From Oculina patagonica (lineage: Eukaryota): 64,000 nt of DNA. Where the stretch lies: positions 24,924,001-24,988,000 of the forward strand of contig NC_135765.1 in the NCBI RefSeq assembly GCF_052425735.1, read 5' to 3'. A program made the translations under genes and the position numbers. Shown piece by piece: positions 19,237 through 47,431 of this stretch (position 1 is the first letter of the stretch; every line of letters starts with the position of its first letter). The notes below the pieces were generated by a model. It searched no databases. It saw only the letters and a program-made list of their open reading frames with translations, and was not told the origin of the DNA.

Positions 19237-22200
19237 TCACTCAGAAACTTCAACAGGAATTAGGTCCTGTATCACTCTACGTAATACTTGTGGCTTTCGC
19301 TCTCCCTTGCCAGCAACTTTGACTTTGGCTGATCGAATCTGCCCATCTCTGCCTGGTAGCAGTTCTTGAATCTTTCCCAGTTTCCAAAATGTTCTTTTCT
19401 TTAGATCAGACTTCACGATTACTATGTCACCTACTGAGATTGGGCTCTCCTTGTTTTGTTTCTTGCATCTCTCATTAGCACGTTCTCGTAGACTCAAAAG
19501 ATACTCGTGTTGCCACCTTTTGGTAAACTGCTGTAGCAGTCGTTGGTGATGTTTAGCTCGCTTTGTCAAGGTTTGGTTGACACTAACAACTTGGAAATGC
19601 TGGTTACTGGGTTCATAGGTAATTCGTCTGCCAGTAATTAGATGGGAGGGCGTAAGTGGAGTTGAAATGGACTCTTCATCATCATAGACATACGTTAACG
19701 GTCGAGCATTTACGATTGCCTGGATCTCCACCATTATGGTTTGTAACTCATCGTAGTTCAATGTAGTGCGTCCCACTGTTTTCTTTAAGGGTTGCTTCAC
19801 AACTTTAACCATGCGTTCCCAAACCCCCCCCCCCCCCCCCCCACCAAGGGGCTCGCCCAATGATAAAGTTCCATGTGATGCGATTGTCAGTTAAGTATCG
19901 CATAACCTCGTCTGATTGTATGATCTTCCTTATATCTTTGGATGCGGATCTGAAGGTCTTGGCGTTGTCCGACAGGAGGGTGACTGGTAATCCCTGGCGA
20001 TTTACGAACCTCCGAAAGGCTAAGAGAAATGATTCGACACTCAAAGAAGGTGTCAGTTCCAAATGAATCGCTCTTGTGGATGCACAAGTGAATAAGCAAA
20101 TGTACACTTTGTCGGAGCCCTTTTCCTTTGAAGACTTTCCATTGTGTATGTACAGCGGTCCTATGAAGTCCAATCCTGTATGGGCAAACGGCGGGTCCAG
20201 AGACTCGTTCCATTGGTAAATCTGGAGTTGGTGGTGGTCTATATGGAGCCCCTTCTACCCTTCTACAGGTGACACACTTTCGTAGAATTCTCTTCACAGC
20301 TTCTCGACCTCTTGGTACCCAGAATCTCTCTCGAATAGTGGTTAAGGTATCCCTGATGCCACTGTGTTTAATCTTGGAATGCACATCCTGGATGATGAGA
20401 TTAGTAAGTGGGTGCTTAGATGGAAGTAAGATTGGATTCTTGCTTTCTTCAGAGAGCGGTGCATTGCTTACTCTTCCCTTACATCTGATGATTTGTTGGT
20501 CGTTAAGGAACAAGTTAAATTGCGTGACGTAGACAGGTGGGAATGTTCCTCTTTTGCTTTGCAGAAATTCGAGTTCTTTGGCAAATGAGGCTGTCTGTAC
20601 AGTCTTGATCCACAGCATTTCAGCTTGATTTAACTCTTGAGCATTAAGTTCCTTTCTCGATGACTGTTCCGGTGACTTGGGAGTTTCACGGTTTGATACA
20701 CTCTTCTTAGCATTACGTATGAACCGTAATATGTAGGCTGTCACGCGTAATAATCGTGTTACACTGCTGTATCGTTCAATGTCAATAACTTGACTGAGAT
20801 TGACTGAATGGTCTTCCGACTCTGTCGTGACCAGAGAATGCGTGACACTTACGGGGTTCTTTACGACTTCTTGAAGGGCATCTTTGTTCTCAGACAATGC
20901 ACTTGTTTGAGGCGACTCGGGCCAATGATCTCTTGATAACCTCAGAAACTTGGGCCCATTCCACCATGTCTGGTTTTGTGCTAATTGCTCTCCTCCACAT
21001 CCTCGTGATGGGAGATCAGCCGGGTTCAACTCTCCGGGACAGAAGTTCCAGTTGGCTTCGTTAGATAGTTCTCGTATTTTGCTGACCCGGTGTTGTACGT
21101 AAGGTTTCCATGCTTTAGCATTTTTGATCCAACACAGCGTGGTGAATGAATCAGTCCATAGAAATGTTCCTTCAATGGGGAGAACGGATTGTATCGTTTG
21201 CTGCGTTGAATGAACTAGCTGGGCTAGCAATGAAGCTCCTAGCAGTTCCAACCTGGGAATTGACTGACGTTTGATTGGGGCTACTCTCGTCTTGGATGTC
21301 ATGATGCTGACTTGTGTTTCACCATTGCTGAATTCGGTTCTCAGGTACACGACTGCTGCATAGGCTCTTTCCGACGCATCTGAAAATCCATGGATCTGAT
21401 ATGAGCATACGGTTGACTGCGTCGGTGAATAATTGGCATAACATCGGGGAACTCGGATGTTCTTCAGAGCATTTAGGTCATTAATGAACGTTTTCCACTT
21501 TGCCAAAGCCTCTCCTTCCAAGCTTTCATCCCAGTTGACCTTCTCGACACATAGACATTGGAAGAGGACCTTCATGCTGATTGTAAACGGAGTTAACAGT
21601 CCAATTGGATCAAAGATTTTAGCTGACAGTTTCAGTACAGATCGTTTGGTAGCTGGAAGGGCTTCTGCATACTCGAATAGCTCAGAGAGGTCATAATGAA
21701 ATTCGTCTCGGATCACATCCCAATAAATCCCGAGTATCTTCACAAATTGTTCGGTTTCCGGTTTAACATCTTTGGCACTGGCTGACTCTTCTCTCTTGAG
21801 ATTTTGTGCAGTTTCGCTTTCTTCGGCAGGGGCTTCCATAACTGACTGGCCTTTTCTTTCTTCGTCCTGCTTGATTTTCTCGCGGAATGACTGACAGTTA
21901 GAATTCCACTTGCGCAGTGAGAATCCTCCATCTTTCATGATTTCCTGTGCTTTGTCATACAAGTTCACAGTTTCATTTTCGCGAAACACTCCTCCTGCCA
22001 GATCATCAACGTAAAGGCTTGAACTTAACAAAGATGTTACTTCTGGTTCCTTTTCTTCATACTTAGACAGATGGTGTTTTATGGTACTTGCCAGGATAGC
22101 TGGACTTGGAGTTAAGCCAAACACAAGCCTTCGAAACTGGAATTGCTTGATTTGCGGACAATCTTTCTCGATATCATCGAACCATAGAAACCTCAGCATT

Positions 22201-24725
22201 CTTCTGTCTTCTGGGTTGATCTGTATCTGATGGAAGGCCTTTTCGATGTCAGCTACTACAGCAAATGGGTAACCTCGAAACTTAACCACAATATCAAATT
22301 GGTGTGGCACTAAGTTCGGTCCTTTCTCTAAACACTCGTTAATGGAGGCAGTTGACTTGTCAGATTTGGCTGAACCATCAAATACAACTCTCAATTTCGT
22401 AGTTTTCCGGTCTGAGCGAATTACGCCATGATGAGGTAAGAAATGCATTGGAGCTTGGTCGTCGTCAAGTTCTGGTACGGCTTCGATAATCGCTGAATTG
22501 ATTTGATCCTTGATCACATTGTCATAATCTTTTAACAGTTCCTTGTTTTTCTTCAGTCGCGAGTGCAGCTGTCTCAATCTTGTAACACACAATTCGTACT
22601 CGTTTGAAGCAGGAACAAGACTTTCTTTCCACGGCAGACCTACTTCGTATCTTCCTTCCGTCTCATCGAAATGAATGCTCTCCAGGAACTCTTTACCATC
22701 TGACTGTGAGGCAGGTGGTTCCTCTCGTACTCCTAACGATTCAGTGTCCCAGAATTTCTGCAAGGCGTTACATAACTCATCGTTCTCACTATGAATGTCA
22801 CATGGGCTCATGGTCATCAATTCTGGTCTCTCTATGATGAGATTTGTAGTTGTAAACTTCTCTCTTGATTCTTCAGCACTTGTGGGACCAGACAAGACCC
22901 ATCCGAACATGCTGCTAACTGCTACAGGACCACTGCTGCCACGAATGACATCCCCAGACACAATATCGAAGTAATAATCGGATCCAATTAGCACATCTAT
23001 GTCCTGTTGACCTGTTTCAGCGATGCTGATGTCAGCAAGCTCGAGACCTTGTAGATGTGTGTGATTGTCAATGTTAACTTTAGCTGACACCGCCGAGCAA
23101 ATCTTTGGGAAACATAGCGCAGATATTTCGATTTCTCCTTGAGATCCTTGTAACCGCAAGCTGACGACATCACATTGTTGCTTTGTGTATCTTTCGTCTC
23201 CAAAAGTGTTAAGATGCAATGTTTCTGACTTCACAGGGGACAGATTAAGCCTTGATTTCAATCGGTTTGTGACGTAGGTGCGTTGACTTCCAGTGTCCAG
23301 AAGAATTCTGACACGTGCAGTTTTAGAATTGACATCGTTAACAGCCACGGCTTTAGCTGTTTGCAAGAGCACAGTTCCCTTTGCCTTGTTGCTCACTGTT
23401 GTCGTTGTCTTCATTTCTTAGGCTGAAACTTCTTTCGGTTTTCCTTGGTCAAGCGTGGAACAAATCGACTGATGATGCCGCTGTTGGCAGTGTCGACATT
23501 TTTTTTGGATTCGTGCACTCCTTCGTTTCGTGATCAAAACGCAAACAATTGAAGCATCGTTTATCTCGTTCCAAAATACTTCTTCGTTGAGCTGTATCTC
23601 GTACCACGCCGCATGATGCAGAATAATGCTCGTTTCGACAATAGGCACATTTGATTTTGAAGCTCCCACCTTGCTGAGAGACGAGTGAATTCGCAGTTGG
23701 CGTTTGATTTCGAAATTTTGAATCACGGCCGGGCGATTGAGATTTCCCGCCTTCGCTTGTTTTCGCCATGGTCATCTCGCTTGCTTCCCGCGCTTCGACT
23801 TCAACCTTTATCACGTTTAGCAACTCCTCAATTTTCCACACAGAATCCTTAGAGTTCCTGGCTATCTGCAATCGGATCTCAGGTGGCAACTTAGACATAA
23901 TGACAGGAATTAAGAGGCTTCCGTATTGATCCGAAGTTACGCCGAGCGACGCCAAACCGCGGGAATGAACACAAATTTGATCGTAGACGTATCGAAGGCA
24001 TTAGAACACGGCGAAACCTTGAGAAGCTGATCCATATGTGCGCTGATAATTTGTTGGGGACGACCGAAACGCTCTTGTAATAATTTGATTGCTGCGTCGT
24101 AGTTTGCTTCGGTTAAGGTAAGACCCTGGATAGCTCGAGCGGCGGCCCCTTCAAGGACAGAATTGAGATAGTTGAACTTGTCGATGTTGGAAATCCCTTC
24201 GTTACGATGTACCGCCGATTGAAACGAATCCCAGAAGGTATTCCACTTGGTTACATCTCCTTTAAACTTCGGAAGATACAACTTCGGTAATCTCGTACGT
24301 ACTGCATTTTGATTCACTGGCTGTGCAGTCGTTTGAGGTGATCCCACGTGTTGCTGACTTGGCATGTTTACCTTGCTCGCATTCTCAATTTTGCACTTCA
24401 GACGAATAATTGAGGCAGTAATTTCTTCTGACTCTTCGATTTCTTTATCAATCGTTGTAACCTCGCATACAGATAATATTTCTTGGTCCATTTCGATTAG
24501 CGACTCTTGTTTTCCACCCAAGAGTTGTCTCATAACACTGAGCCGTTCGTAATCCTTGTCTTCGCCTTGCAATATTTTGGTTAATTCTTCATCCAGTTTC
24601 GATACTTGTCGTCGGTGTCCTTCACGGATAACTCGCAGTCGTTCCAAATTCGATGTAGTCGCTTGCATACTCGATGTACTTGGTTTGTCGGGTGTTTTCT
24701 TCGATTTAGTCTTTTTTGGAGGCAT
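19237..24725 (-). pseudogene. BEL/Pao gag-pol polyprotein, disrupted
   Basis: Gag (LPKLYLPKFKGD..FWDSF..KFNYL; three Cys/His knuckles), protease LLDTGSQRTY, RT ADIEKAF / LVFGL..SP / YVDDL, RNase H HGFSDAS / WTDS, integrase H..H..CVTC, DFIGP, SDNA, WERMV. Frameshifts near 24000, 23500, 20195 and 19830, and an in-frame TAA at 23418-23420. Confidence 0.9.
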
Positions 24726-24740
24726 TGCAATTGAAAAGTT

Positions 24741-24758
24741 GCCCCACGTTGGGCGCCA
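24741..24758 (-). other. Primer-binding site complementary to tRNA-Lys(CUU) 3' end
   Basis: TGGCGCCCAACGTGGGGC directly after the 5' LTR, the known 18-nt Lys1,2 PBS sequence. Confidence 0.85.
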
Positions 24759-24893
24759 TTTAGTGAACACAACAAGACATGTTTATTCGTCGTCGAATCG
24801 ATATTACAATATGGTGCAATATATAAACCACGTGATCGCCTAATTTGACTACATTAATAAATTTACATAAATTATATGAAACTGTTTACAACA
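24759..24893 (-). repeat. 5' LTR
   Basis: Starts TGTTGTAAAC, ends CACTAAA, and contains AATAAA on the minus strand. Confidence 0.95.
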
Positions 24894-29265: not shown

Positions 29266-29408
29266 CAGTTGAATCTCGATAACTCGAACCTTTTTCGATT
29301 CACCTCCAGGTCTTTTTCTCACTAACTTGACCTTCGATAACACGAACTCCCGAAATCTCGAACCTCTTGTGATTTCCCCTGAAGGTTCCAGTTATCGGGA
29401 TTCAACTG
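29266..29408. mobile_element. Tc1/mariner/pogo-type MITE (TA TSD)
   Basis: TA|CAGTTGAATCTCGATAACT ... AGTTATCGGGATTCAACTG|TA. Confidence 0.85.
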
Positions 29409-29425
29409 TACCAGCATATCTTGAT

Positions 29426-31231
29426 GTTCGCCAGGGAGACCCACTTTCCCCATTTCTTTTTATTATCGCTCTTGAGACCTTGGCAGTCAACATCCGCAAT
29501 AATAAACAGATAAAGGGTATATCCGTCGATGGAAACGAATTAAAACTAACAATTTTTGCGGACGATATGACATCGTTTGTTCGTGACAGAGCCTCTTTCT
29601 TTGTTCTCATGAACACTGTCAAGCTTTTCGGCATATACGCTGGTTTAAAAATGAACCACGAAAAAACTGAAATCCTTCCACTAGGTAATATGGTGCTACA
29701 CCCCCAGGATTTCGGTGTGGAAGAGATTAAAGACGTTGTTAAGATTCTCGGTGTCTGTTTTACTAACGACCACCTATTGTTTGATAAAAGAAACTTCGAG
29801 TCAATTGAAAAAAGTGTCAAAGAATTTCTGCAAGGTTGGAGTTGGAGAGGCCTCACAATTATCGGCAGAATACAAGTAATCAAATCGTTCGTTATTCCAA
29901 AAATCCTATACCGCGCAGCTTTGGTTTCTTGTAAAAAAGATTTTATTAAAAAACTAAATTCGCTCATCTACTCGTTCGTATGGAAAGGTAAAGATAAAAT
30001 AAAACGAACGGTGCTTATTAATCCAGTTGAGAAAGGAGGTCTAAACATGCCTGATATCGGGTCAATGATCTCTGCACAGAGAATAATATGTATAAAAAGA
30101 TATTTAGATCCGTACACCGCAGGCTGGAAATTTTTTTTAGATACGTATCTTAAAAGGGTGGGAGGCAAATTCCTATTTCATTGCAATTTTGACTTTGAAA
30201 GGCTATCGGTAGTTACTCCGATCTTCTATAAGGAATGTCTAATCCTATGGTCCTCTATGAATAAAACAGATCCCTCTACACTGGAAGAAATTTCTAATGA
30301 AGTAATATGGAACAACAAGTACATCTGTATTGAAGGTAAATCTGTCTTCAGCGCCAAAATACGTGAACATGGTTTATATAAAGTTGGCGAGCTCTACGAC
30401 TGTGCGGGGGAGCTTGTGTTTAAAAAAGAACCTTTGCGATCGGCTCTTTCACCCATAGACACTTTCTTACTGTTCAGTATATACAAGGCTCTTCCATTAC
30501 ATTGGCGAAATACTTTATACGCAAACAGAGGTCTTATACCTTTTCACACACATCCACTAAATCTCTCCACTTTTCATATCAAAATTAACAACGAAGAAAA
30601 CGAAGTAGAAAAATTGCAATCAAAATCTTTGTATAGCAGCCTGATCTCTAAAATTGTACGTGCGCCCGCTGCCATAAAGAAATACGAAGATCTTTTTAAT
30701 ACCGAGTCTTTTCAATTAAACTGGAAAGACATATTCCTTTTACCATTCCAAGTAACCTTGAGTACAAAACTACGCGAATTTCAGTACAAAATATTAAATA
30801 GGATTCTCTACACAAACAAGTCGCTTCATAAATTCAAAATAGTCGACTCCCCATTATGTTACCTATGTAAAGTGGACATAGAAACTATAGAACACTTCTT
30901 TTTCTATTGTCCACGAGTTAGGATGTTCTGGAATGAAGTTGTGAACTTGTTTAGAGACCAATTAAAAGTCTCTAAGGACTTCGAGATCACAGATGTTTTA
31001 TTTGGAATAAGTAATAAAGAAACTCACAGTTCTTTGATGAACTATATCATTCTTGAAGGCAAATATCTCCTGTATCTTTTCAAATTAAATGACAAATTTT
31101 TATCACCAAGACTTTTATTAGAACGTATTAAGAATACTTACAAACTGGAACGTTTCATTGCGAGAGAGAACAATAATCTAAATTACCATTATACGAAGTG
31201 GGAGCCTCTTCTCCCTCTATTATCACCTTAG
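29426..31231 (+). CDS. LINE ORF2 C-terminal part (partial RT and zinc finger), open but 5'-truncated
   Basis: VRQGDPLSPFLF, FADD, ILGV, GGLNMPD, CYLC..ETIEHFFFYC. Confidence 0.85.
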   Translation, partial: VRQGDPLSPFLFIIALETLAVNIRNNKQIKGISVDGNELKLTIFADDMTSFVRDRASFFVLMNTVKLFGIYAGLKMNHEKTEILPLGNMVLHPQDFGVEEIKDVVKILGVCFTNDHLLFDKRNFESIEKSVKEFLQGWSWRGLTIIGRIQVIKSFVIPKILYRAALVSCKKDFIKKLNSLIYSFVWKGKDKIKRTVLINPVEKGGLNMPDIGSMISAQRIICIKRYLDPYTAGWKFFLDTYLKRVGGKFLFHCNFDFERLSVVTPIFYKECLILWSSMNKTDPSTLEEISNEVIWNNKYICIEGKSVFSAKIREHGLYKVGELYDCAGELVFKKEPLRSALSPIDTFLLFSIYKALPLHWRNTLYANRGLIPFHTHPLNLSTFHIKINNEENEVEKLQSKSLYSSLISKIVRAPAAIKKYEDLFNTESFQLNWKDIFLLPFQVTLSTKLREFQYKILNRILYTNKSLHKFKIVDSPLCYLCKVDIETIEHFFFYCPRVRMFWNEVVNLFRDQLKVSKDFEITDVLFGISNKETHSSLMNYIILEGKYLLYLFKLNDKFLSPRLLLERIKNTYKLERFIARENNNLNYHYTKWEPLLPLLSP

Positions 31232-38013: not shown

Positions 38014-40701
38014 ATGGTTAGAATGGCTACTCCGTTGTGGTTCTACGTGACTTTGTTTTACTGTGCGCTATTCTTCTCAGGAGTAACAGGAACTTACCGA
38101 TACTACCAGCCAGGTGACATCACTCTCGGAGGTCTCTTTCTTTTACACTACACTACAGAAGATGGCAAATGCGGTGACTTTTTCCCCATGGGCCTTGGGC
38201 ATGTAGAGGCGATGATATTTGCTATCGATAAAATCAACAGAAATACCAATCTGCTTCCAAACATAACTCTAGGATACGACATCCGGGACTACTGTGAAAG
38301 CGCTGCAAAGGCGATGGATCACACTTACGATTTTGTCCGACGAAATGATATGGTGAAGGAATTCCAAAACGCTAGCTGTTCATGTTGTGTGAAGGAGAAT
38401 GCCAGAACGCAGAATAAACCTACGTCGATAGCAGCAGTTATTGGTCCAACAGACTCAGGAAGCGCCGTTCTGGTGGCCAGCCTTTTGCAAGTGGCTGGTA
38501 TTCCAGTCATCAGCCACTCGGCAACAAGCAACGAGTTAAGCTCGCCACAGTACCGCCATTTCTTCCGTACAGCCCCTCCGGACGGACAGCAGGCAAGCGC
38601 CATGGCCGATATCATACAGCATTTTAACTGGAGCTACATTGCTGCGGTGGCGATGGACGACTCTTACGGTCGAAATGGAGTCTGGGAATTAGAATCTGAA
38701 GCTGAAAGGAGGAAAGCGTTTTGTATTTCCTTTGCCGAATATATACCCAGACAAGAGTACAATACAAAGTTAACAAGAGCCGTCGCCAAGCTTAAAAGTT
38801 ACCCAAACATTCGAGTCGTAGTGTTGTGGCTTTTCGGTGGATATGGGCGGCGTTTTCTGAAAGAAGCAGTGAAACAGAAGCTTTTTGACCGCACGTGGAT
38901 TCTAAGTGATGCTTTGGCGACAGAAGATGATGCGTTTGTCGGATTAAAAAACAGTGATCAAAAAATTCTTAATGGATCGCTTGGTGTTCAGCCGCGATAT
39001 TTAGACAATCAGGAATTCAAGAACTTCTTGCTTAAGGGAAATTTTAGGTCATCTTCAAGAAGTAAAGTTCCCTGGTGGAAAGAATTTTGGCAGAGCGAGA
39101 ATCAGTATAGCTGCTCTTCAATAGCTGGGCGCTATGACCGGAATGTCTGTATGGAAAGGGCTCTCCGCACTTTATACGACACCTACATCCCCTATGTGTT
39201 GGACGCTGTTTCTGCTGTTGCAAACGCCCTTCAGAACATGGAAAAATGTTCTTCATTAAAAAGTAGAAATTCTGGAGAAGTATGCGTAAAAGCTCAACCT
39301 ACCATAGACCCAGAAGAACTCGAGAAGTATCTTCGCGGTGTTGATTTCAAAGGTTTAACCGGGCGAGTCAGTTTTGACCAATTTGGTGATCCAGTAACAT
39401 CTTCCTATGATATCGTCCATTTTCAGGTCAGCGGTGCACTGTCCAATGCACATCATACTGTAAAGCGCGTCATCGGCTCGTGGGAAAAAGGCCGAAAGCA
39501 AAAACTTCAGTTGAATGATACCATTATCAAGTGGAATACAATGTCTAGTCAAACCGTTCCCCCAAGGTCATTCTGCCATGACGACTGTCAACCCGGCACA
39601 TTTCTGTCACTTACGACCCCTTGTTGTTGGGAGTGCATCAAATGCCCGGCTGGAGCCGTTAGCACCCAAGTGAATGACGTTAACTGCACTGAGTGCCCAC
39701 TAGGACAAATGCCGGATGAAGTAAGGTCAAAATGCCTGGATCTTCCAGAAGTTAAATTACAGTGGTCAAGCTTAACTTCTGTTCTTGTGATATTTTTTGC
39801 CACATTCGGACTTGTTCTCGTCGCCATTTGCAGTTTCATCCTTTACAAACATCGAGCAACACCTTTGGTAAAAGCAGCAAACCGTGAATTGAGTTTTATT
39901 CTTATGGTCGCCATTGCGCTTTCCTTTTCTGTGTCGATTTTGTCACTTGCCAAACCAACAAACTTCACGTGCAGTTTGGTTCACTGCTGGCGGTCCACGG
40001 TGCTCGTGACATTCATTTCCACCTTGATACTTAAAACAATGAAGATACTTAGTGCATTTCGAATAAATGTAATCGCAGAAAGATTCAAAAAGTTTATTCT
40101 ATCAACAAAAAGTCAAACATTTCTTGTTCTGGCACTTATCTCGATACCAGGTCTGTTTCTATCGCTCTGGATTGCGTTAGATTCACCACGTCAAGAACGA
40201 ATCATACAGCCACTGGAAGGCACAATTCTTCTGTCATGTTCTCTGCACCAATCATCTGTTGGAATGACACTTCAGATCGCAATTACTGTTTATACATCGT
40301 TTCTTGCAGTTGTTTGCACGTTCTATGCCTTCAAAGCAAGAACACTCCCAGAAAATTTTAACGAAGCGAGATATATTGGTTTTTCTATGTACATTTTACT
40401 GCTTTCGTCTGTAGCATACTATCCTCTGGATATCGGCCTCAAGGGTTCCTATGCCACAAACTTGACATGTGCGATGACTCTTTTAAGCTCCTATGGGTTG
40501 CTAGCCTGCATGTTCGGCCCAAAAATTTACGTTATTTCACGCCAGCCTGAAAAGAATACCCACGAGGCTGTTAGTTGCCAAGTGTCAGATTACTCGTTCA
40601 GCAGTTTCTTTAAGGGTAAAAACGGCATTTCTCCCGCACAGACAAGCAACCAAGAACACATGCACTTGGAATTTGCGTCTGTCAGTAGCTTGACAAACTA
40701 A
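38014..40701 (+). CDS. Class C GPCR (calcium-sensing / metabotropic glutamate receptor-like), 895 aa, single coding exon
   Basis: Signal peptide; Venus-flytrap motifs GDITLGGLF, NLLPNITLGYDIRDYC, FFRTAPPD, FNWSYI, DDSYG; Cys-rich CCWEC; 7TM with TPLVKAANRELS, LPENFNEARYIGFSMY, FGPKIY. Acceptor TTTTCCAG at ~38002 suggests a 5' UTR intron. Confidence 0.95.
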   Translation: MVRMATPLWFYVTLFYCALFFSGVTGTYRYYQPGDITLGGLFLLHYTTEDGKCGDFFPMGLGHVEAMIFAIDKINRNTNLLPNITLGYDIRDYCESAAKAMDHTYDFVRRNDMVKEFQNASCSCCVKENARTQNKPTSIAAVIGPTDSGSAVLVASLLQVAGIPVISHSATSNELSSPQYRHFFRTAPPDGQQASAMADIIQHFNWSYIAAVAMDDSYGRNGVWELESEAERRKAFCISFAEYIPRQEYNTKLTRAVAKLKSYPNIRVVVLWLFGGYGRRFLKEAVKQKLFDRTWILSDALATEDDAFVGLKNSDQKILNGSLGVQPRYLDNQEFKNFLLKGNFRSSSRSKVPWWKEFWQSENQYSCSSIAGRYDRNVCMERALRTLYDTYIPYVLDAVSAVANALQNMEKCSSLKSRNSGEVCVKAQPTIDPEELEKYLRGVDFKGLTGRVSFDQFGDPVTSSYDIVHFQVSGALSNAHHTVKRVIGSWEKGRKQKLQLNDTIIKWNTMSSQTVPPRSFCHDDCQPGTFLSLTTPCCWECIKCPAGAVSTQVNDVNCTECPLGQMPDEVRSKCLDLPEVKLQWSSLTSVLVIFFATFGLVLVAICSFILYKHRATPLVKAANRELSFILMVAIALSFSVSILSLAKPTNFTCSLVHCWRSTVLVTFISTLILKTMKILSAFRINVIAERFKKFILSTKSQTFLVLALISIPGLFLSLWIALDSPRQERIIQPLEGTILLSCSLHQSSVGMTLQIAITVYTSFLAVVCTFYAFKARTLPENFNEARYIGFSMYILLLSSVAYYPLDIGLKGSYATNLTCAMTLLSSYGLLACMFGPKIYVISRQPEKNTHEAVSCQVSDYSFSSFFKGKNGISPAQTSNQEHMHLEFASVSSLTN

Positions 40702-43221
40702 TTGCTGTTTTTCACTGCCATATCATAAAAAAAATATAATCTATACCATTAAATTAAAAATAAGGTCAAAAAGTGATAGGTTGTAGAAAATCAGTCAACG
40801 AAGTTCTATTCGAAGTCTCAGTTTAAAATGAGTGGTAAACTGAAAGCATTCTGCTGCGGCGGCATCTAAATCGTAAGATAAATTCAGTTAACACAGTGAA
40901 CTATGCTAAGCTGTTTACAGCCCTCAATATTCTTAGGCCGTGGATCGCGAGGCAAAAACTCGTGATCAAAGCAGTCAAGATTGATGACCCTGTACGACAT
41001 CCTCAAGCCACTTATTTCTGAATGAGGAAAGTAAATTCGTTTAAATTGGCAAAGCCATGGATTCTAAGAAAATTCGGTAAAAATATCCATACAAAGCAGT
41101 TAAAGCGATCGCTGAGCTCCCTTTAGGATGAAATTGAAGACAGCTTGGAATATAAGCCCTTGGAAGTTCAAGCAAATTGATACCCCACCGTGGTACAAGA
41201 GGGGGGAGGGGTGGAAGGACGTGGATGGAACACCTCCCCAGGTTTCTCGTTCTATTAACGCGCAACGAAACTATTTTCCACTGGGTTGACAGTTCTTAGC
41301 CTTCTCTACAAGATGACATAATTTTTGTTGGCTGTGACTTCATTAATAAGAAGAACGGAAAATAACGGAAATTAATGCAAAGTCAAGCAAGAATGCTGAT
41401 GGAAAAGTCACGCATCATAGTGGTGACGTAGCAAAATCTACGCAAGGGATGCACGAACAGCTACTGAAAGTAAAACATCTCTTTAAAATTACGGAGAAAC
41501 CTCATCGGGAAGTTTGGCATCCACCCCCTTAGCCCTCCCCCTCTCCCCCGCCCATGTACGTTAGGGGCAATTGCAGCTGCTGTTGTGTTGTTTGTTACAC
41601 GCAATCAGTAAGTCCATTTGCATTTCCACTTAGTCCATCACTACAAAACTTAAGCCCATTTTTGAACCCCACCCACCGTCTCTTTTTCACACCATTACCT
41701 TCTCGTCGGCTGCCAACTTGCCCCGTTTGAAGCCATATTTTTAGCAGCCCCACACCCATTCCCTCATCTAATAAATGAAAGGTCCCTCAGGGAATTGCTC
41801 TCAATTGTTTATTAGGAAAAGTTAAATCACTAAACATTCCGGACCTTAATAATTTTCCCTCCCGCGCTCTTTTTACAACAAATGAATCAAACTGCAAACA
41901 GACGCAAAAACATAATTGTCTGTAAAGCATATTGAACACAGTGAAATCAATTGGCTGAAGAGCATTCCATGAAAGATTTAAGTTTCAATTTGGCAACTGT
42001 TCACGAAATGTTTGCATGGAGTGTCGTTTCCTTATTTACAAATCAGTGACAGGTACATTTTCTGGCTCTGTGGACAACTTTGATCTACTACAGGTAAATT
42101 GTCTGGTTTCGTAAACAACTGTTTACAGGTTGATCAACTGGCTCCGCAAAACAACAGTTGCCTCCAGTGACCGGAGATAAGTTGTCATGGGCGTTAAAAA
42201 ATGCGGCAGCGAATGCAACATGCAGCAATTAAAAAAAAACTGTTACGAGTCATGAAAACAAAAACATTGGGCGGTCAACTTGAATGCGTAGAAAATACAA
42301 ATGGAGTCGCTCTACCGATACTGGGAAGCTGTGAGTTTCTATTTTAAACAACTATAATGAGAAACGAACATTTAGTTATTAGATAAATTTTATTTAAATA
42401 ACCTTTACAATGGCTTTAAGGAAGTGAGAGACCAGATATATTTCTCGGCTTGAGAAAAAGTATGTGGTCAGTGGCATTTGCTTAGCTCATCCTTGGTGTA
42501 AAAACCCGTGAAACTCATCAGTGACGTAAAATTTAAAAACGAAAACAACAACAACAAGCAAGACAACATAAATAGAGCCTCGAAACATAAATAGAGCAAG
42601 GAAACAAAAGCATAAGGGTAGTGATTCAACAGCGTCTTGCTAAGTCTGGCTAAGGATTCGTCTGAGTGGGTCTTGGTTGACTTACCAAGAAAACGAAAAG
42701 AAAAAACTTGTACCTTTATAGGCGTACAGCGGTGAACTGACTTATAGATGTATTGTATTTATGCAAATGGAACTCATGTGGGTTTCTATTTAGAGCATAC
42801 TGCTTGAGTGTAACAGAACGATGAAGTATAGGACACGAAAGAAACTAAAAAGATTGCTTGCCTGCCTTGCCGTTTTTTTGTTCTACACGGTATACAAGAA
42901 TTGGTTTGGAACAGTGAAAACAAATAGCTCGGAAGGTAAGTAAACTTCTGAGTATAATGGAATACGTACTTCTTATACTGGAACATATAACCTTACATAA
43001 TGTAATTAATATTACCGCTAATTTCAATGAAAAATTTTTATTATAAACATTACAATATTTGAAAGACTACAGCAGAAAACGACTAAAGATAAAAAATGCA
43101 ACCAGGTAAAGCCCCTTTCGTTCGTCTTTTCCATTTTTTTGGTATTTTCTATTATTTTTTGAATATGTATTATCACCATTTTTGCATTAACAAATTGCAT
43201 TTTAAATGTAACTTGTTGTTT

Positions 43222-43301
43222 AACGACCATCTTCACTTGTGAGTAAAACTTACGGTGTAAAGTTTCCTCACAACTGAAGATGGTCGTTGAAAAACCGAAA
43301 C
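43222..43301 (+). mobile_element. Short hairpin with hammerhead-like core, possible Penelope-like relic
   Basis: AACGACCATCTTCA...TGAAGATGGTCGTT palindrome; CTGAAGA-TGGT..ACC-GAAAC. Confidence 0.4.
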
Positions 43302-45106
43302 TTTTCGACATGTGACATGTCAAAATCAAATGTGTCCTTTTCTTTCTAAAAATTATAGTCAGGTAATTAATTTTGTTTTTTTAAACAGTATATGATAAAG
43401 CTTAAAAAAGTGCTCGGGCTCCCTGTGCGCGAACGAACCAATATTAATGACTGTCTCTGCACGGACATCGAATTCCTAAATTTTTAAATTTGTCAAATGA
43501 ACAAAGTCTTTAATTTTGAAAACTTTGCCAAAATATTTAAAGCAATAAACTTGATCAGCCACTAAACAGATCGCTCAAAACGCCCACTCAGCCGTTTCCA
43601 GGATAAGAAGGAAGCCAGAAAGAATCCTTTTTACCGTGCCATTTTTTCGCAAACGAGCCTGGGGGCTCTCGATCCGGACAGACCTAAAATGTTCGTGTAG
43701 GTAGATCCTTTCGAGTTTTCCTTTGCTCTATTTCAAAGAACTGCTTTACTCTTAAAGACCAGTTTGTACAACAAGCCTTACATGAGCCGAACCTCTAAAT
43801 ACAATCGGAAAACTGAAATAGCTAAGCGGGGTTTGTTGGTCAGCGTCTTTGAAAAAATCAAATTAACCTGAAGAGATTTTCCTTGTTTGTTCCGGAAAGC
43901 AACATCTTCGGCTTGATATGATCGAAGATATGATTGCTAAAAATTAATTTTAAACATGTATCTGCAGAGTAGACAGATGGTGGTTTCTTTCGTCTTTGTG
44001 AGGGCTCTCCGATCGGATATGTCGTATCAGTTAACGACACAACCGTGCAAGTTTATTCTCGTTCGTTCGTCCTGAAATAAGACATACATGTATCTTCATA
44101 ATTAGCGGTCTTGTTTGTTTCGGTGGTTTGCCTCTATCTACGCGTGCTTTTCAGGAAAAATAACTCTGGTTGAACAACTTCAAAGCCATTCTTTACATAA
44201 ATTTAAGACATAAAAAACATGAAACCCTATACAAATTTTTGGTATCGATTCCGTGGATTCTTTAGTAAATAAAGTCTTTTGAGATGTCCCAGATGAACGG
44301 GATATGTGCCTCACTTTTACGAAACGGATATCTTAATGGTATTTTTCCATTTTTAGACGTGATAACAATCTAGACGTTATCAAAAGAGATTTTAAGTGAA
44401 AGCGAATGATGTTAATGGTATAATCTAGCTACTTTAACCTACTTCACCTATTTTGTCGGAGAACCTCTACAAACCCCGCAGTTTCTGTTCAATGCGAACA
44501 AAGAGGACTGGATTCAAATGTTCGTTTCCAAGTTCTATTTACGGTGATCAGTGCGAACGTTGTAGGTAAATAATCTAAATGCATTAGTCACAAATGCATT
44601 CCTCGTACAATACGAGGTTCTAAACGAATCGACATTATCTACAATTTGAAAATCCAACAATTCTGTACCTACATTATATTCTACCTAAGGTTTCATAGTT
44701 CTGTGTTTCGTGAGTAGATAACACCTAGCTTAGGAACATTCAAATGTCGAAACGACAAGATAGAGCAGTCTTGCCACCTGGCAAATCGAAGGCAAGCAAG
44801 TTGTTGTCGACTAAAAGGAAATCAATAAAAGACGCTCCCCAGTCTCAACCAATCAACATGAGGTACCCCCCCCCCCCCCCCCCAATCACACACACTTATA
44901 TTTGTATAACCTTATAAAAGGAATTGGGGCGGGGAATACCTGGAGAAAGAAAAGTAATCCTGTCCTGTACCGTGGGGAGGGTCTACACTCTTTGGTAAAA
45001 AAAAAAAATAGTTTATTTTTTTAATATATTTTGATATTTATGTGACCTTGAAAATTTACATTTTGGTTATTTATTGGTTTCAGGTTATCCTCAAATTTTT
45101 CCCAAC

Positions 45107-47242
45107 ATGAAGTTTGCCACCGAGAGTAACGATGAGTACAAATACGACATTATCATCATTGGTTCAGGTCCAACAGCCCTAGGCGCTGCTCAAAGAGTTT
45201 TTGAGCTGAACAAAAAGTTTCCTAACCTAACGATTGCTATCCTCGAACAAAATGGCAAGCCAGGTGGGCTTGCTTCATCTGAGAGAGATGATCAAGGATT
45301 CCTCTGGGACATGGGAGGACATGTGATATTTTCACACTACGATTACTTTGATGACACCCTTAACAGGACTGTTAAGAGTTGGAATAGGAGAGAACGAGCT
45401 GCGTATGCCTTCATGAAGGGATCCGATGGCATTAGAAGATTTATCCCCTACCCCGTTCAAAACAATATCGAGGTTATGGACAGAGTGGACCAGCAAAAGT
45501 GCCTATCGGGGCTTGAGGACGTTGCAGCAAATAATGTGACAAAAGGAAAGCCTGTTAATTTCGACCAGTGGCTTGTCCTTAACTTTGGTGTTGGTCTTTG
45601 CGAAGTATTTATGAGAAAGTACAATAGAAAAATTTGGACGGTTGATCCTTCTGAAATGAACTTTGCCTGGGTTGGCGAGCGTGTTGCAGTTCCTAATATT
45701 AGTGAGATAAAGCATAAGATTGAAATGTATGGCAATGAAACCTCACCGAAAGATTCAGCATGGGGACCTAATAACTTCTTTCGATATCCGAAGTATAAAG
45801 GAACTGGTGGAATATGGCAAGCCATTGCTGACCGGCTTCCTGTTAAGTGGTTTAAGTTCTATAATAAAGTCATAGAGCTGAATATCGACACAAGGTCTGT
45901 AACGGTCGAGAGGGCCACACCGGTTAAATTAGTGCAGGAATATACGTTTGACACTGTAATATCTACAGCACCGCTCGACATATTTGTCAATATGATAACT
46001 GGTAGGGACGAGTCTCTAGGGAAGATGAAGAAATTGGCATCCCAGCTAGTTTATTCACGCACTCATGTTATAGGTATAGGCCTTGCTGGTCAACCTCCAC
46101 CGATGCTTTCACACAAGTCTTGGGTGTACTTTCCTGATGCAGACTCTCCATTCTATCGGCTAACAGTATTCTCTAGCTACTCAGACGATCACGTTCCAGA
46201 GCCTAGAAAACAGTGGTCACTCATGTGTGAGGCGGCAGAACCTAAACAAAACTCCAATTCAGAATACTGGAGAAAGGACAATTTAATTAATGCGACTTTT
46301 CAAGCATTGATAGATTATGGATTCATTACATCAGACATGATTGTTTCAAAATACTATCGACGGCTGGAACACGGGTATCCGGTTCCTACTCTCAACAGAG
46401 AAACGATTCTGGACAAAGTCCAGCCTTGGTTGGAGTCTAAAGGCATCTACTCACGTGGTCGGTTTGGAGGTTGGCGATATGAAGTTTCAAACCAAGACCA
46501 CTCGTTCATGCAAGGTGTTGAAGTCGTCGACAGAATGCTGAGAGGAATTCCAGAGGAAACTTACTTTGACCCAAGCCTTGTAAATTCCAGGCGAAACACT
46601 GGTCGGGTTTTTTCTTACGAATTTGTGATTGCTCATTATAACGAAAATCTTGATTGGATTACACCGATAGCCAGTAACGCTCATGTCTATCACAAGGGCA
46701 ACGATCTTCAGCCTCCGCCCGTACAACTGCATGCCTGGGATAGGTTACCTAACGTTGGCCGGGAAAGTCACACTTACCTGCACCACATCATAAACAATTA
46801 TGACAACTTGCCAGAGACAACTATTTTCCTACAGGCAGACAACAGGCATCTTCCTTGTAGATTCTTTACAAGACCTCCAATGGATTACGTTTATGAAATA
46901 AAAAGCATGACATCACTGAACATTACTTGTCAAAAACCCAGACGTTTTACGTCGTGGGAAGAAATTCGCTACTCAAGCAAGTGGCTTAAGATATTGAGAA
47001 GTGGTGAAATGCGTCGTGCTAATTTGACTTTGCGGGATTTTTTCACGGAACTGTTTGGCTTTCCTCCACCAAGTTTCGTTTATTTTTGCCCCGGAGGTTG
47101 TTTCGCTGCAACGCGGGACATGATCAAGAAGCATCCAAAAAGCTTTTACATTAAGGCTGTATCATTCCTAGATAACCATCCTAACCCAGAGGAAGGTCAT
47201 TATTTTGAAAGGCTTTGGTCTACAATATTTTCTTTACCCTAA
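45107..47242 (+). CDS. Eukaryotic-type UDP-galactopyranose mutase (FAD-dependent) fused to a C-terminal DUF3431-like domain (711 aa from ATG 45107)
   Basis: IIGSGPT, GGLASS, DMGGHVIFSHY, PYPVQNNI, FMRKYNRKIW, WVGERVAVP, WGPN.FRYP..GTGGIW, WVYFPD..PFYR, HGYP, SRGRFGGWRYEVSNQDHSFMQGVE follow fungal, trypanosomatid and nematode UGM. After ~46620: VIAHYNENLDWI, LPNVGRESHTYLHHIINNYDNLPETTIFLQ, F.ATRDMI, GHYFERLW.IF. Splice acceptor at 45082-45083. Confidence 0.9.
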   Translation: MKFATESNDEYKYDIIIIGSGPTALGAAQRVFELNKKFPNLTIAILEQNGKPGGLASSERDDQGFLWDMGGHVIFSHYDYFDDTLNRTVKSWNRRERAAYAFMKGSDGIRRFIPYPVQNNIEVMDRVDQQKCLSGLEDVAANNVTKGKPVNFDQWLVLNFGVGLCEVFMRKYNRKIWTVDPSEMNFAWVGERVAVPNISEIKHKIEMYGNETSPKDSAWGPNNFFRYPKYKGTGGIWQAIADRLPVKWFKFYNKVIELNIDTRSVTVERATPVKLVQEYTFDTVISTAPLDIFVNMITGRDESLGKMKKLASQLVYSRTHVIGIGLAGQPPPMLSHKSWVYFPDADSPFYRLTVFSSYSDDHVPEPRKQWSLMCEAAEPKQNSNSEYWRKDNLINATFQALIDYGFITSDMIVSKYYRRLEHGYPVPTLNRETILDKVQPWLESKGIYSRGRFGGWRYEVSNQDHSFMQGVEVVDRMLRGIPEETYFDPSLVNSRRNTGRVFSYEFVIAHYNENLDWITPIASNAHVYHKGNDLQPPPVQLHAWDRLPNVGRESHTYLHHIINNYDNLPETTIFLQADNRHLPCRFFTRPPMDYVYEIKSMTSLNITCQKPRRFTSWEEIRYSSKWLKILRSGEMRRANLTLRDFFTELFGFPPPSFVYFCPGGCFAATRDMIKKHPKSFYIKAVSFLDNHPNPEEGHYFERLWSTIFSLP

Positions 47243-47254
47243 ACAACCCTTTGT

Positions 47255-47431
47255 CAGTGACGGCGGAGCTTGGGTGGCTGGGGGGGGGGGGGGGGGGCTT
47301 TAGCCCCCTCAGAATTTCCGAAAAAAAAAAGACTTACTAAGAGAAGAGTCTTTTAACCCCCCCCCCCCACTTCAAGTCACTAGTCAGCCCCCCCCCCCCC
47401 CCCCACTTGGAAAATTGTTCCGCTGTCCCTG
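47255..47431. mobile_element. Small MITE just downstream of the UGM-fusion stop codon
   Basis: CAGTGACGGCGGA ... TCCGCTGTCCCTG inverted ends with G/C runs; TTTGT on both flanks. Confidence 0.5.

What the first reader, a model, noticed from the sequence alone, without database searches (positions are those of the whole stretch)
45107..47242. Animal UDP-galactopyranose mutase fused to a DUF3431-like domain: candidate one-gene furanose-sugar glycosylation module
Seen: one uninterrupted ORF whose first ~500 aa keep the eukaryotic UGM motifs in order (GGH loop, Arg in GERVA and FYR, Trp in WVYFP, Tyr in HGYP and WRYEV, NQDHS). It runs with almost no linker into a ~205-aa domain with the NVGRESHTYLHHII.NYD.L..TTIFLQ and GHYFERLW signatures. 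Known: UGM makes UDP-galactofuranose and also accepts UDP-arabinopyranose. It is characterised in bacteria, fungi, trypanosomatids and nematodes, is absent from vertebrates, and the characterised enzymes are stand-alone. DUF3431 is uncharacterised. Inference: the C-terminal domain could be a furanosyltransferase or another enzyme that consumes the unstable furanose donor. That would imply furanose glycan synthesis in this animal (arabinose is reported in coral mucus) and give a function hint for DUF3431.
Basis: partly seen in the sequence, partly recalled or inferred. Interest (0 to 1): 0.92.

Follow-up and report, generated by a model that had tools for sequence, protein, structure and literature searches.

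The report
Membrane-anchored galactofuranose mutase–transferase fusion gene
A coral gene joins the enzyme that makes the rare sugar donor UDP-galactofuranose to an uncharacterised domain (DUF3431) that folds like a glycosyltransferase and sits next to, or is fused to, the same kind of mutase in many viruses, so it is a strong candidate for the first animal furanose-sugar transferase.

Summary
ORF 45074-47242 encodes a complete eukaryotic UDP-galactopyranose mutase (UGM; E 1e-114 to solved T. cruzi and A. fumigatus enzymes, all checked active-site residues kept), running with at most 8 linker residues into a Pfam DUF3431 domain.

The ORF is not the whole gene. An upstream exon (42821-42935) splices in frame (GTAAGT...tttcAG) onto 45084. 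It adds a basic tail and a hydrophobic anchor, giving a 757-aa protein predicted to face the Golgi/ER lumen. The annotated Oculina orthologue has the same two-exon layout.

The fusion is conserved in stony corals and echinoderms, with many starfish paralogues, under purifying selection (dN/dS 0.22).

The DUF3431 domain models confidently (pLDDT 93) as a GT-A-like fold without a DxD motif.

The UGM link also appears in viruses:
- 34 of 80 viral DUF3431 loci (15 of 38 lineages) have a bacterial-type UGM gene within 2 kb.
- 22 of 80 viral UGM loci carry DUF3431.
- One giant-virus protein fuses GT41-like, GLF and DUF3431.

Best reading: a lumenal mutase-transferase that makes UDP-galactofuranose and transfers it at once. 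Activity, location and acceptor are untested. The arabinose link is weak. The same stretch was also noted in this scan as s1-294421.

The parts
42821..42935 (+). Coding exon 1: start ATG, basic tail MKYRTRKKLKR, hydrophobic segment LLACLAVFLFYTVY, short spacer. It ends with one base (g) of a split Gly codon.
   Evidence: tblastn of the Oculina protein's residues 1-56 hits 42776-42937 at E 2e-15, 64% identity. Sequence read. The spliced CDS is 2274 nt, in frame, with a single terminal stop. The Oculina gene has the same layout.
42854..42895 (+). Predicted signal anchor (residues 12-25 of the 757-aa protein). There are 7 Lys/Arg before it and 2 after, which favours N-in, C-lumenal (type II) topology.
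   Evidence: Kyte-Doolittle 2.56 over 13 residues, and no other hydrophobic segment in the protein. N-terminal hydrophobic segments are also present in the annotated Oculina and echinoderm homologues.
42936..45083 (+). Intron, 2148 nt, GTAAGT...tttattggtttcAG, phase 1.
   Evidence: The Oculina orthologue has an intron of about 2.2 kb at the same Gly codon.
45084..47242 (+). Coding exon 2 (stop codon included): the rest of the protein, with both catalytic domains.
   Evidence: dN/dS 0.225 against Oculina.
45134..46606 (+). Eukaryotic-type UDP-galactopyranose mutase domain (FAD-binding GSGPT Rossmann start, His loop, both catalytic Arg).
   Evidence: PDB matches at E 1e-114 over the full length. 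Active-site residues checked against PMC3322874. Pfam Amino_oxidase and NAD_binding_8 match; the bacterial GLF model scores below its cut-off.
46616..47233 (+). DUF3431 domain, GT-A-like fold. Conserved residues: E513 (YNE), K530, N549-x-G-R-E553, H555, Q576, and 691-HxNPEEGHYxERxW-704 (numbering of the 711-aa ORF product).
   Evidence: Pfam E 6.2e-17. AF2 model pLDDT 93.2, pTM 0.91. Fold matches. Conservation.

Best explanation
This is a functional two-exon coral gene for a 757-aa type II membrane protein. Its short basic tail stays in the cytosol and its two catalytic domains face the lumen of the Golgi or ER.

Domain 1 is a flavin-dependent UDP-galactopyranose mutase. It contracts UDP-galactopyranose to UDP-galactofuranose, a reaction whose equilibrium lies about 11:1 against the product.

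Domain 2 (DUF3431) is a GT-A-fold glycosyltransferase without the usual DxD motif. It takes the furanose donor made next door and transfers it to a glycolipid, glycoprotein or mucin acceptor. That would pull the unfavourable equilibrium and remove the need for a UDP-galactofuranose transporter.

Shown:
- the gene structure
- UGM identity with an intact active site
- conservation of the fusion under purifying selection
- the GT-A-like fold
- a recurrent UGM-DUF3431 association in viruses

Inferred:
- mutase activity
- transferase activity and the donor
- lumenal location
- the acceptor
For: UGM identity:
- E 1e-114 to solved T. cruzi and A. fumigatus UGMs over the whole domain.
- His-63, Arg-182, Trp-315, Arg-327, Tyr-419, Arg-447, Tyr-453 and Asn-457 equivalents are all kept.

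Gene and anchor:
- Exon 1 matches the Oculina N-terminus at E 2e-15. The GT..AG junction is in frame.
- The Oculina gene has the same two exons.
- Annotated echinoderm paralogues also start with hydrophobic anchors.
- Starfish stand-alone DUF3431 proteins have the classic Golgi transferase layout of anchor, Ser/Thr/Pro stem and domain.

Fusion conserved and selected:
- Full-length homologues occur in Oculina, Desmophyllum, Acanthaster, Patiria and Holothuria.
- dN/dS is 0.225.

Fold:
- AF2 pLDDT 93, pTM 0.91.
- All top PDB matches are GT-A transferases: Foldseek probability up to 0.99, VIA Z 9.7 to heparosan synthase, GpgS, HAS and DPMS, with 720 of 999 chains at Z>=5.
- ESM Atlas models close in structure to its top DUF3431 hit include RgpF, TOD1/MUCI70 and GT2 (that search used the hit's model, not this protein's).

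Domain partners elsewhere are glycan-building domains: GT90, LicD, Nucleotid_trans and GT32-type domains.

Independent link to UGM:
- 34 of 80 viral DUF3431 loci (15 of 38 clusters at 50% identity) have a bacterial-type GLF gene within 2 kb. Sixteen are same-strand with a gap of at most 100 bp, some with 4-bp overlaps.
- 22 of 80 viral GLF loci carry DUF3431.
- One giant-virus ORF is GT41-like + GLF + DUF3431 in one 1130-aa protein.
- In several phage and giant-virus loci DUF3431 is the only transferase-like gene beside GLF.
- The viral sequences nearest the animal clade in the tree are mostly GLF-linked.

Chemistry to explain:
- Acanthaster and Patiria, the genera with the paralogue expansions, have gangliosides ending in beta-Galf, beta-Fucf and alpha-L-Araf. 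Their transferases are unknown (PMC8228791).
- The 11:1 equilibrium and the transporter requirement come from PMC7278926.
Against: - No activity has been measured for either domain.
- The family lacks a conserved DxD. The 'DH' motif that follows Q576 in most family members is not kept in the animal fused proteins.
- PDB fold matches are only moderate (TM 0.3-0.45, Z under 10).
- Only 1 of 16 bacterial DUF3431 loci has glf nearby, and 23 of 38 viral lineages have none within 10 kb. The family may therefore use several donors.
- The hydrophobic segment in this species is short (14 residues).
- N-glycosylation sequons are not significantly enriched (8 against 4.65 +/- 2.0).
- UGM needs reduced flavin, and eukaryotic UGMs use NADPH (PMC3624792). 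No lumenal reductant is known.
- RNA evidence is thin. Small runs of guessed RNA type hold low-depth contigs across the ORF, including one bridging the domain junction (46481-46709). One contig also lies in the intron. The exon 1-exon 2 junction was not examined in reads.
- Galactofuranose has not been reported from stony corals, to my knowledge.
Confidence: 0.55

Rival explanations
1. The DUF3431 domain is a glycosyltransferase for a different sugar. It would build the acceptor for galactofuranose or extend it, and is fused or adjacent to UGM only because both work on the same glycan. The true furanosyltransferase would be encoded elsewhere.
For: DUF3431 is often combined with other transferase domains in multi-step proteins (GT90, GT32-type, GT41-like). 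Most bacterial loci and many viral loci have no UGM nearby. Some viral loci carry other transferases next to the pair (GT1, GT10, GT25).
Against: In the animals the fusion contains no other transferase. In loci such as L013 (RNA polymerase | DUF3431 | GLF) and the L056-type phages (terminase ... DUF3431, methyltransferase, GLF), DUF3431 is the only transferase-like gene beside the mutase. A mutase without a consumer of its product would be useless there. Fusion directly to the donor-making enzyme, arising twice independently, is most simply explained by donor hand-over.
Confidence: 0.17
2. The DUF3431 domain is a GT-A-fold enzyme of another class acting on the furanose nucleotide or its product. 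Candidates are a sugar-1-phosphate (phosphodiester-forming) transferase, a nucleotidyltransferase supplying UDP-galactose, or a hydrolase.
For: Nucleotidyltransferases (IspD, CMP-Kdo and CMP-pseudaminic acid synthetases) and a GlcNAc-1-phosphotransferase appear among the lower fold matches. There is no DxD motif. The domain occurs fused to LicD, a phosphotransferase family.
Against: The best-ranked structural matches are sugar transferases of GT2, GT81 and GT78 type. The N-terminal strand is followed by YNE(D/N)L rather than the glycine-rich loop of nucleotidyltransferases (the comparison rests on my knowledge of those families). A nucleotidyltransferase makes little sense in the Golgi lumen, where UTP and sugar-1-phosphates are not expected.
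Confidence: 0.12
3. The protein is cytosolic or membrane-tethered on the cytosolic face. The upstream exon would be a tether or be unused, and the enzyme would glycosylate cytosolic or small-molecule acceptors such as steroid or terpene glycosides.
For: All characterised UGMs are cytosolic and need NADPH-reduced flavin (PMC7278926, PMC3624792). The hydrophobic segment here is short. An in-frame ATG at 45107 could start an anchor-less form. Starfish steroid glycosides carry Galf and Araf (PMC7278926; titles). Sequon enrichment is not significant.
Against: Seven positive charges precede the hydrophobic segment and two follow it, which predicts a lumenal C-terminus. The anchor is conserved in Oculina and in most annotated echinoderm paralogues, in stand-alone echinoderm UGMs and in stand-alone DUF3431 proteins with stem regions. 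In Oculina the residue aligned with Met-45107 is Val, so an internal start is not conserved.
Confidence: 0.12
4. The gene is a contaminant, a recent horizontal-transfer relic or a pseudogene with no role in the animal.
For: The long single coding exon is unusual for an animal gene. RNA support is thin.
Against: It lies between animal-type sequences: a class C GPCR, a BEL/Pao retrotransposon and a LINE-like reverse transcriptase. G+C content is like its surroundings. It has a spliceosomal intron shared with Oculina. It is intact over 2.27 kb and under purifying selection (dN/dS 0.225, dS 0.35). It is conserved across corals and echinoderms.
Confidence: 0.03

Closest known systems
Eukaryotic UDP-galactopyranose mutases (A. 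fumigatus UgmA/Glf, T. cruzi and L. major UGM, C. elegans GLF-1)
   Same: Full-length homology to solved structures at E 1e-114. It shares the FAD Rossmann start, the mobile histidine loop, both catalytic arginines and the eukaryote-specific Trp-315.
   Different: Those enzymes are stand-alone and cytosolic, and they feed a UDP-Galf transporter (PMC7278926). This one has an N-terminal signal anchor and a C-terminal extra catalytic domain.
Known galactofuranosyltransferases (GfsA of Aspergillus, GT31; GlfT1/GlfT2 of mycobacteria, GT2; WbbI of E. coli; LPG1 of Leishmania)
   Same: The proposed job is the same: transfer of Galf from UDP-Galf. Like GfsA, it has a predicted Golgi type II layout and a GT-A-type fold.
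   Different: There is no sequence relationship. Pfam finds no GT2 or GT31 domain, and hhalign against E. coli WbbI gives probability 0.2. There is no DxD motif. None of the known enzymes is fused to the mutase.
Pfam DUF3431 (PF11913) proteins of fungi, protists, bacteria and viruses
   Same: The C-domain is a clear member at 62.5 bits. It shares the family motifs YNE, NxGRE, FxQ and NPEEGHYxERxW.
   Different: The family has no assigned function. It appears in only 4 papers in the library, none about function. Here it is fused to UGM, which gives the family a testable function.
Bifunctional sugar-nucleotide or glycan enzymes made by fusion (for example WbbM, heparosan and chondroitin synthases, or fungal and plant mutase-transferase pairs acting in sequence)
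   Same: The logic is the same: two consecutive steps of glycan assembly sit on one polypeptide.
   Different: Those join two transferases. A donor-isomerising flavoenzyme fused to the transferase that uses the isomer has, to my knowledge, not been described.

Membership tests
Eukaryotic-type UDP-galactopyranose mutase | Full-length sequence homology to experimentally solved UGMs | tested here: met
   4dsg E 1.1e-114 (query 15-498 against chain 12-473). 3ukh, 3uka and 3ute E about 1e-113 (query 10-500).
Eukaryotic-type UDP-galactopyranose mutase | FAD-binding GxGxxG start and the mobile histidine loop (GGH, His-63) | tested here: met
   IIIGSGPTALGAA and WDMGGHVIFSHY align with the A. fumigatus residues. 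The role of His-63 is described in PMC3322874.
Eukaryotic-type UDP-galactopyranose mutase | Catalytic and substrate residues Arg-182, Trp-315, Arg-327, Tyr-453, Asn-457 (plus Tyr-419 and Arg-447) | tested here: met
   All are identical in the alignment. Roles come from PMC3322874. The roles of Tyr-419 and Arg-447 come from my own knowledge.
Eukaryotic-type UDP-galactopyranose mutase | Interconverts UDP-Galp and UDP-Galf with reduced flavin | not testable with these tools
   Needs an enzyme assay.
Pfam DUF3431 (PF11913) | Score above the family's gathering threshold over most of the model | tested here: met
   62.5 bits against a cut-off of 25. Model positions 3-204 of 219 are covered.
GT-A fold glycosyltransferases | Single Rossmann-like alpha/beta/alpha domain matching solved GT-A structures | tested here: met
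   Model pLDDT 93. All top Foldseek and VIA-align matches are GT-A enzymes, with Z up to 9.7 and 150-165 residues aligned. The scores are moderate.
GT-A fold glycosyltransferases | DxD (or DxH) metal-binding motif after the fourth strand | tested here: not met
   The end of that strand carries Q576 (120 of 125 sequences). No acidic pair is conserved, and the following 'DH' of most members is lost in the animal fused proteins. The structural equivalence of the position is inferred from strand order. Some GT-A families are metal-independent.
GT-A fold glycosyltransferases | Binds a nucleotide sugar and transfers the sugar | not testable with these tools
   Needs binding and transfer assays. The indirect support is the UGM association.
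Golgi type II membrane glycosyltransferase layout | Short cytosolic tail, N-terminal signal anchor, lumenal catalytic part | tested here: met
   Exon 1 gives MKYRTRKKLKR followed by a 14-residue hydrophobic segment. The feature is conserved in homologues. Actual localisation is not testable here.
Known galactofuranosyltransferase families (GT2 GlfT, GT31 GfsA, WbbI) | Sequence membership in one of these families | tested here: not met
   No GT2 or GT31 Pfam hit. hhalign against WbbI gives probability 0.2. If DUF3431 is a GalfT, it is a new family.

The most novel reading that the evidence does not exclude
DUF3431 is a previously unrecognised glycosyltransferase family specialised for galacto-configured furanose donors. 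In corals and echinoderms it is welded to a membrane-anchored, lumenal UGM. The result is a self-sufficient Golgi module that makes and transfers Galf (and, in diverged starfish paralogues, perhaps L-Araf and D-Fucf) without any UDP-furanose transporter. These would be the long-missing enzymes behind the furanose-capped gangliosides and steroid glycosides of starfish. It would also imply that stony corals make furanose glycans.
Probability: 0.45. Interest if true: 0.85.

Novelty: new variant of a known kind. Interest (0 to 1): 0.78.

Why it matters
- Galactofuranose is absent from vertebrates and is studied mainly as a drug target in pathogens. In animals only the nematode mutase has been studied, and no animal furanosyltransferase is known.
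- Starfish gangliosides ending in Galf, Fucf and Araf have been known for decades, with their transferases only postulated (PMC8228791).
- This gene family offers concrete candidates for those transferases.
- It gives a large domain of unknown function (over 4,600 clusters at 50% identity) a testable function.
- It suggests a new cell-biological solution: a lumenal mutase coupled to its transferase, in place of a cytosolic mutase plus a transporter.
- It predicts furanose glycans on coral surfaces, which would matter for coral-microbe and coral-predator recognition.
- The viral UGM-DUF3431 pairs suggest that phages and giant viruses add galactofuranose to their own or their hosts' glycans.

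Tried and rejected
- **Flanking repeats:** direct or inverted repeats flanking the gene looked like a mobile-element signature (joints). They are only poly-C and poly-G runs at 44866-44883, 47280-47297 and 47357-47403.
- **RNA evidence:** They show low-depth contigs over the ORF and one in the intron, so they prove neither transcription nor splicing.
- **Small metagenomic contigs:** context look-ups for stand-alone DUF3431 proteins were uninformative.
- **tblastn of the C-domain:** there was no hit in GenBank phages. There were four weak hits in plasmids. The one context examined, a Planctomyces plasmid, sits near glycosyltransferases but has no glf.
- **E. coli WbbI:** my recollection that this galactofuranosyltransferase is related (via DUF4422) was wrong. 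It has no Pfam hit and hhalign probability 0.2.
- **N-glycosylation sequons:** counting them as a test of lumenal location was inconclusive.
- **Cluster look-ups:** they gave no organism names for the 45-53% identical fused proteins, so the full taxonomic range of the fusion is unknown.
- **Tunicate UGM paper (PMC13390645):** it concerns bacterial-type UGM acquired by Ciona, not this family.
- **'Stand-alone' coral DUF3431 hits:** most turned out to be fragments of fused genes.
Full report
**1. Observation**

ORF 45074-47242 on the + strand is open for 722 codons, and ATG 45107 gives 711 aa. Pfam finds DUF3431 at residues 508-709 (E 6.2e-17, 62.5 bits, cut-off 25). It also finds Amino_oxidase and NAD_binding_8 at the N-terminus. 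The bacterial GLF model scores below its threshold, at 13.5 against 26.3 bits.

Against solved structures, residues 10-500 match the T. cruzi UGM (4dsg) at E 1.1e-114 and the A. fumigatus UGM (3ukh, 3uka, 3ute) at about 1e-113. The matches run end to end. The bacterial D. radiodurans UGM scores only 3e-4, so this is the eukaryotic type.

By alignment, these residues are all identical:
- the histidine-loop His-63
- Arg-182
- Trp-315
- Arg-327
- Tyr-419
- Arg-447
- Tyr-453
- Asn-457

PMC3322874 describes the roles of Arg-182, Arg-327, Trp-315, His-63, Tyr-453 and Asn-457. The UGM alignment stops at residue 500 and the first strand of the C-domain starts at 504.

**2. The ORF is not the whole gene**

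The closest named homologue is Oculina patagonica LOC144665929 (P0002, 785 aa, 84% identical). It carries about 55 extra N-terminal residues with a hydrophobic stretch. Its residues GYRPIFPDV align with GYPQIFPNM of the window, upstream of ATG 45107.

tblastn of that N-terminus finds window 42776-42937 at E 2e-15. Reading the DNA gives this layout:
- ATG at 42821
- 38 codons plus one base, ending at 42935
- donor GTAAGT at 42936
- acceptor tttattggtttcAG ending at 45083
- the split codon g+gt = Gly restores the frame of the long ORF

The spliced CDS is 2274 nt and encodes 757 aa with one terminal stop. The annotated Oculina gene has the same two exons, separated by about 2.2 kb at the same Gly codon. 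An upstream ATG at 42776, where the Oculina model starts, is closed by a stop after five codons in the window.

Exon 1 encodes MKYRTRKKLKR followed by LLACLAVFLFYTVY. Seven basic residues precede the 14-residue hydrophobic segment and two follow it. By the positive-inside rule (established knowledge), this predicts a signal anchor with the catalytic part in the ER/Golgi lumen.

N-terminal hydrophobic segments are present in most RefSeq echinoderm paralogues. They are also present in stand-alone echinoderm UGMs such as P0103, P0112 and P0113. Starfish stand-alone DUF3431 proteins (P0276-P0284) have an anchor, a Ser/Thr/Pro-rich stem and then the domain, which is the standard Golgi transferase layout.

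The anchor in this species is short, and sequon counting was inconclusive at 8 against 4.65 +/- 2.0. The lumenal location is therefore predicted, not shown.

**3. A real host gene**

The window also holds:
- a BEL/Pao retrotransposon
- a LINE-like reverse transcriptase
- a class C GPCR
- a methyltransferase-like ORF

G+C content is uniform across the window. Against Oculina, dS is 0.35 and dN/dS is 0.225.

Full-length fused homologues occur in Desmophyllum, Acanthaster, Patiria (at least ten paralogues, several on one contig) and Holothuria. They also occur in many unnamed assemblies, whose taxa could not be resolved.

Read evidence is weak. Three small runs of guessed RNA type carry low-depth contigs over the ORF. 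One spans 46481-46709 across the domain junction with one mismatch. Another lies in the intron. The very high depth at the flanks comes from homopolymer runs.

**4. What the C-terminal domain is**

A search of 1.84 billion cluster representatives finds 4,602 relatives at E<=1e-3. They fall into three groups:
- stand-alone proteins of 200-300 aa
- UGM fusions
- multi-domain proteins

With a 125-sequence alignment, AlphaFold gives pLDDT 93.2 and pTM 0.91.

Foldseek against the PDB returns only GT-A-fold enzymes, at moderate scores. The best are ArnC at E 6e-4, chondroitin synthase, DPMS and GtrB. Nucleotidyltransferases rank lower. VIA-align gives Z 9.7-8.5 for heparosan synthase, GpgS, hyaluronan synthase, mannosylglycerate synthase and DPMS, with 720 of 999 chains at Z>=5. 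In AlphaFold DB the best reviewed matches are the uncharacterised WxcX (TM 0.6) and y4gN.

ESM Atlas models structurally close to its top DUF3431 hit include RgpF, TOD1/MUCI70 and GT2 families. That structural search used the hit's model, not this protein's. The Atlas lists most DUF3431 clusters as viral.

Conserved residues are E513 in YNE, K530, N549-x-G-R-E553, H555, Q576 at the end of the fourth strand, and 691-HxNPEEGHYxERxW-704. There is no conserved DxD.

Elsewhere DUF3431 is fused to GT90, LicD, Nucleotid_trans and GT32-type domains. So the fold and the company it keeps point to a glycan-building transferase. One hallmark motif of the fold class is missing.

**5. Independent link to UGM**

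A giant-virus-like contig (L009/L010) has a stand-alone DUF3431 gene abutting a bacterial-type GLF gene.

I then scanned IMG/VR with a DUF3431 alignment and searched the 80 loci returned for UGM. The results:
- 34 loci have a GLF gene.
- 31 of those lie within 1 kb.
- 16 are on the same strand with a gap of at most 100 bp, several with 4-bp overlaps.
- After clustering at 50% identity, 15 of 38 lineages are GLF-linked.

In the reciprocal test, 22 of 80 viral GLF loci contain DUF3431, mostly adjacent. Many of these members had been missed by the first scan.

In giant-virus contig L012 a single 1130-aa ORF carries GT41-like, NAD_binding_8/GLF and DUF3431 domains, with the mutase before DUF3431 as in the coral protein. 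The mutase there belongs to the bacterial family, so this fusion arose independently.

In L013 and the L056-type phages, DUF3431 is the only transferase-like gene beside GLF.

In a maximum-likelihood tree the animal fused and stand-alone domains form one clade (support 99/92). Three of the four nearest viral rows are GLF-linked. The trait is scattered across the viral part of the tree.

Bacteria do not show the pattern. Only 1 of 16 loci, a Chlamydiota MAG, has glf adjacent.

**6. Mechanism proposed**

UGM's equilibrium lies about 11:1 towards the pyranose. In fungi the enzyme is cytosolic and a dedicated transporter carries UDP-Galf into the Golgi (PMC7278926). A lumenal mutase joined to the consuming transferase would draw on the ordinary lumenal UDP-galactose pool. 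It would pull the equilibrium by immediate use and would need no furanose-nucleotide transporter.

The full-length model has pLDDT 87 and pTM 0.78. That is compatible with a fairly fixed domain arrangement, but the interface could not be inspected.

The open problem is flavin reduction. Eukaryotic UGMs are reduced by NADPH and run about 1000 cycles before oxidation (PMC3624792). No lumenal reductant is known.

**7. Chemistry that needs such enzymes**

Acanthaster gangliosides end in beta-Galf or beta-Fucf. Patiria gangliosides contain beta-Galf and terminal alpha-L-Araf. The review that lists them postulates unidentified furanosyltransferases (PMC8228791).

These are the genera with the largest paralogue sets. 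All three sugars share the galacto configuration. It is my inference that diverged paralogues might handle different donors.

Mucus arabinose characterises the complex clade and is absent from the robust clade (PMC11189453). The window's nearest relatives, Oculina and Desmophyllum, belong to the robust clade, which is my own taxonomic knowledge.

**8. Novelty**

DUF3431 occurs in four papers of the library, none on function. Recent papers on galactofuranosyltransferases list none on DUF3431. The Ciona UGM paper treats bacterial-type UGM and relies on a domain signature that does not detect this family.

The fused proteins are in public databases as 'uncharacterized' or 'amine oxidase domain-containing'. 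The finding is thus a new variant of a known kind: a mutase-transferase pair joined into one anchored polypeptide, with a candidate new transferase family.

Another first-stage note (s1-294421) on the same stretch pointed to a 5' acceptor. I tested that and confirmed it.

Noticed in passing
L012:7205-10597 (+), IMG/VR contig IMGVR_UViG_3300035703_002088 (719,641 bp): A giant-virus ORF of 1130 aa combines a GT41-like domain, a bacterial-type UDP-galactopyranose mutase and DUF3431 in one protein. This fusion is independent of the animal one, and the mutase again precedes DUF3431.
   Followed up: partly
P0103, P0112, P0113, P0108 (echinoderm proteins): Echinoderms also have stand-alone eukaryotic-type UGMs of about 550-600 aa with an N-terminal hydrophobic anchor. 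This suggests that membrane-anchored, possibly lumenal UGM is general in these animals.
   Followed up: partly
window 42776-42793 (+): An upstream ATG, homologous to the annotated start of the Oculina protein, is closed by TAG after five codons here. It is either a short upstream ORF or a lost alternative start.
   Followed up: partly
window 44866-44883, 47280-47297, 47357-47403: Long poly-C and poly-G runs flank the gene. They explain the very high read depth and the false 'joints' spanning the gene in the laid contigs.
   Followed up: yes
window 19237-24770 (-): A BEL/Pao-type LTR retrotransposon with a 1175-aa open pol ORF (DUF1758-type protease, RT, Peptidase_A17, integrase zinc finger). 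DUF1759 gag-like ORFs lie beside it.
   Followed up: partly
window 38014-40701 (+): A single-exon 895-aa class C GPCR with ANF_receptor, NCD3G and 7tm_3 domains lies just upstream of the UGM gene's first exon.
   Followed up: partly
window 29327-31231 (+): A 634-aa ORF with reverse-transcriptase and zf-RVT domains, i.e. a LINE-like element.
   Followed up: no
P0273 and P0121 (coral proteins): These DUF3431 proteins are preceded by tandem degenerate copies of the UGM start motif (..FNIITDSASTAPG..). They could be a decayed mutase domain or a gene-calling artefact.
   Followed up: no
AlphaFold DB cluster A0A2G7GBW6: This 451-aa protein, automatically named 'Flavoprotein', has a DUF3431-like C-terminal half. 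It may be another flavoenzyme-DUF3431 combination.
   Followed up: no
L056-type phage loci (19 loci, e.g. L056:2119-4405): A conserved three-gene block of DUF3431, Methyltransf_24 methyltransferase and GLF lies close to the terminase gene. It suggests that these phages make a methylated galactofuranose glycan.
   Followed up: partly
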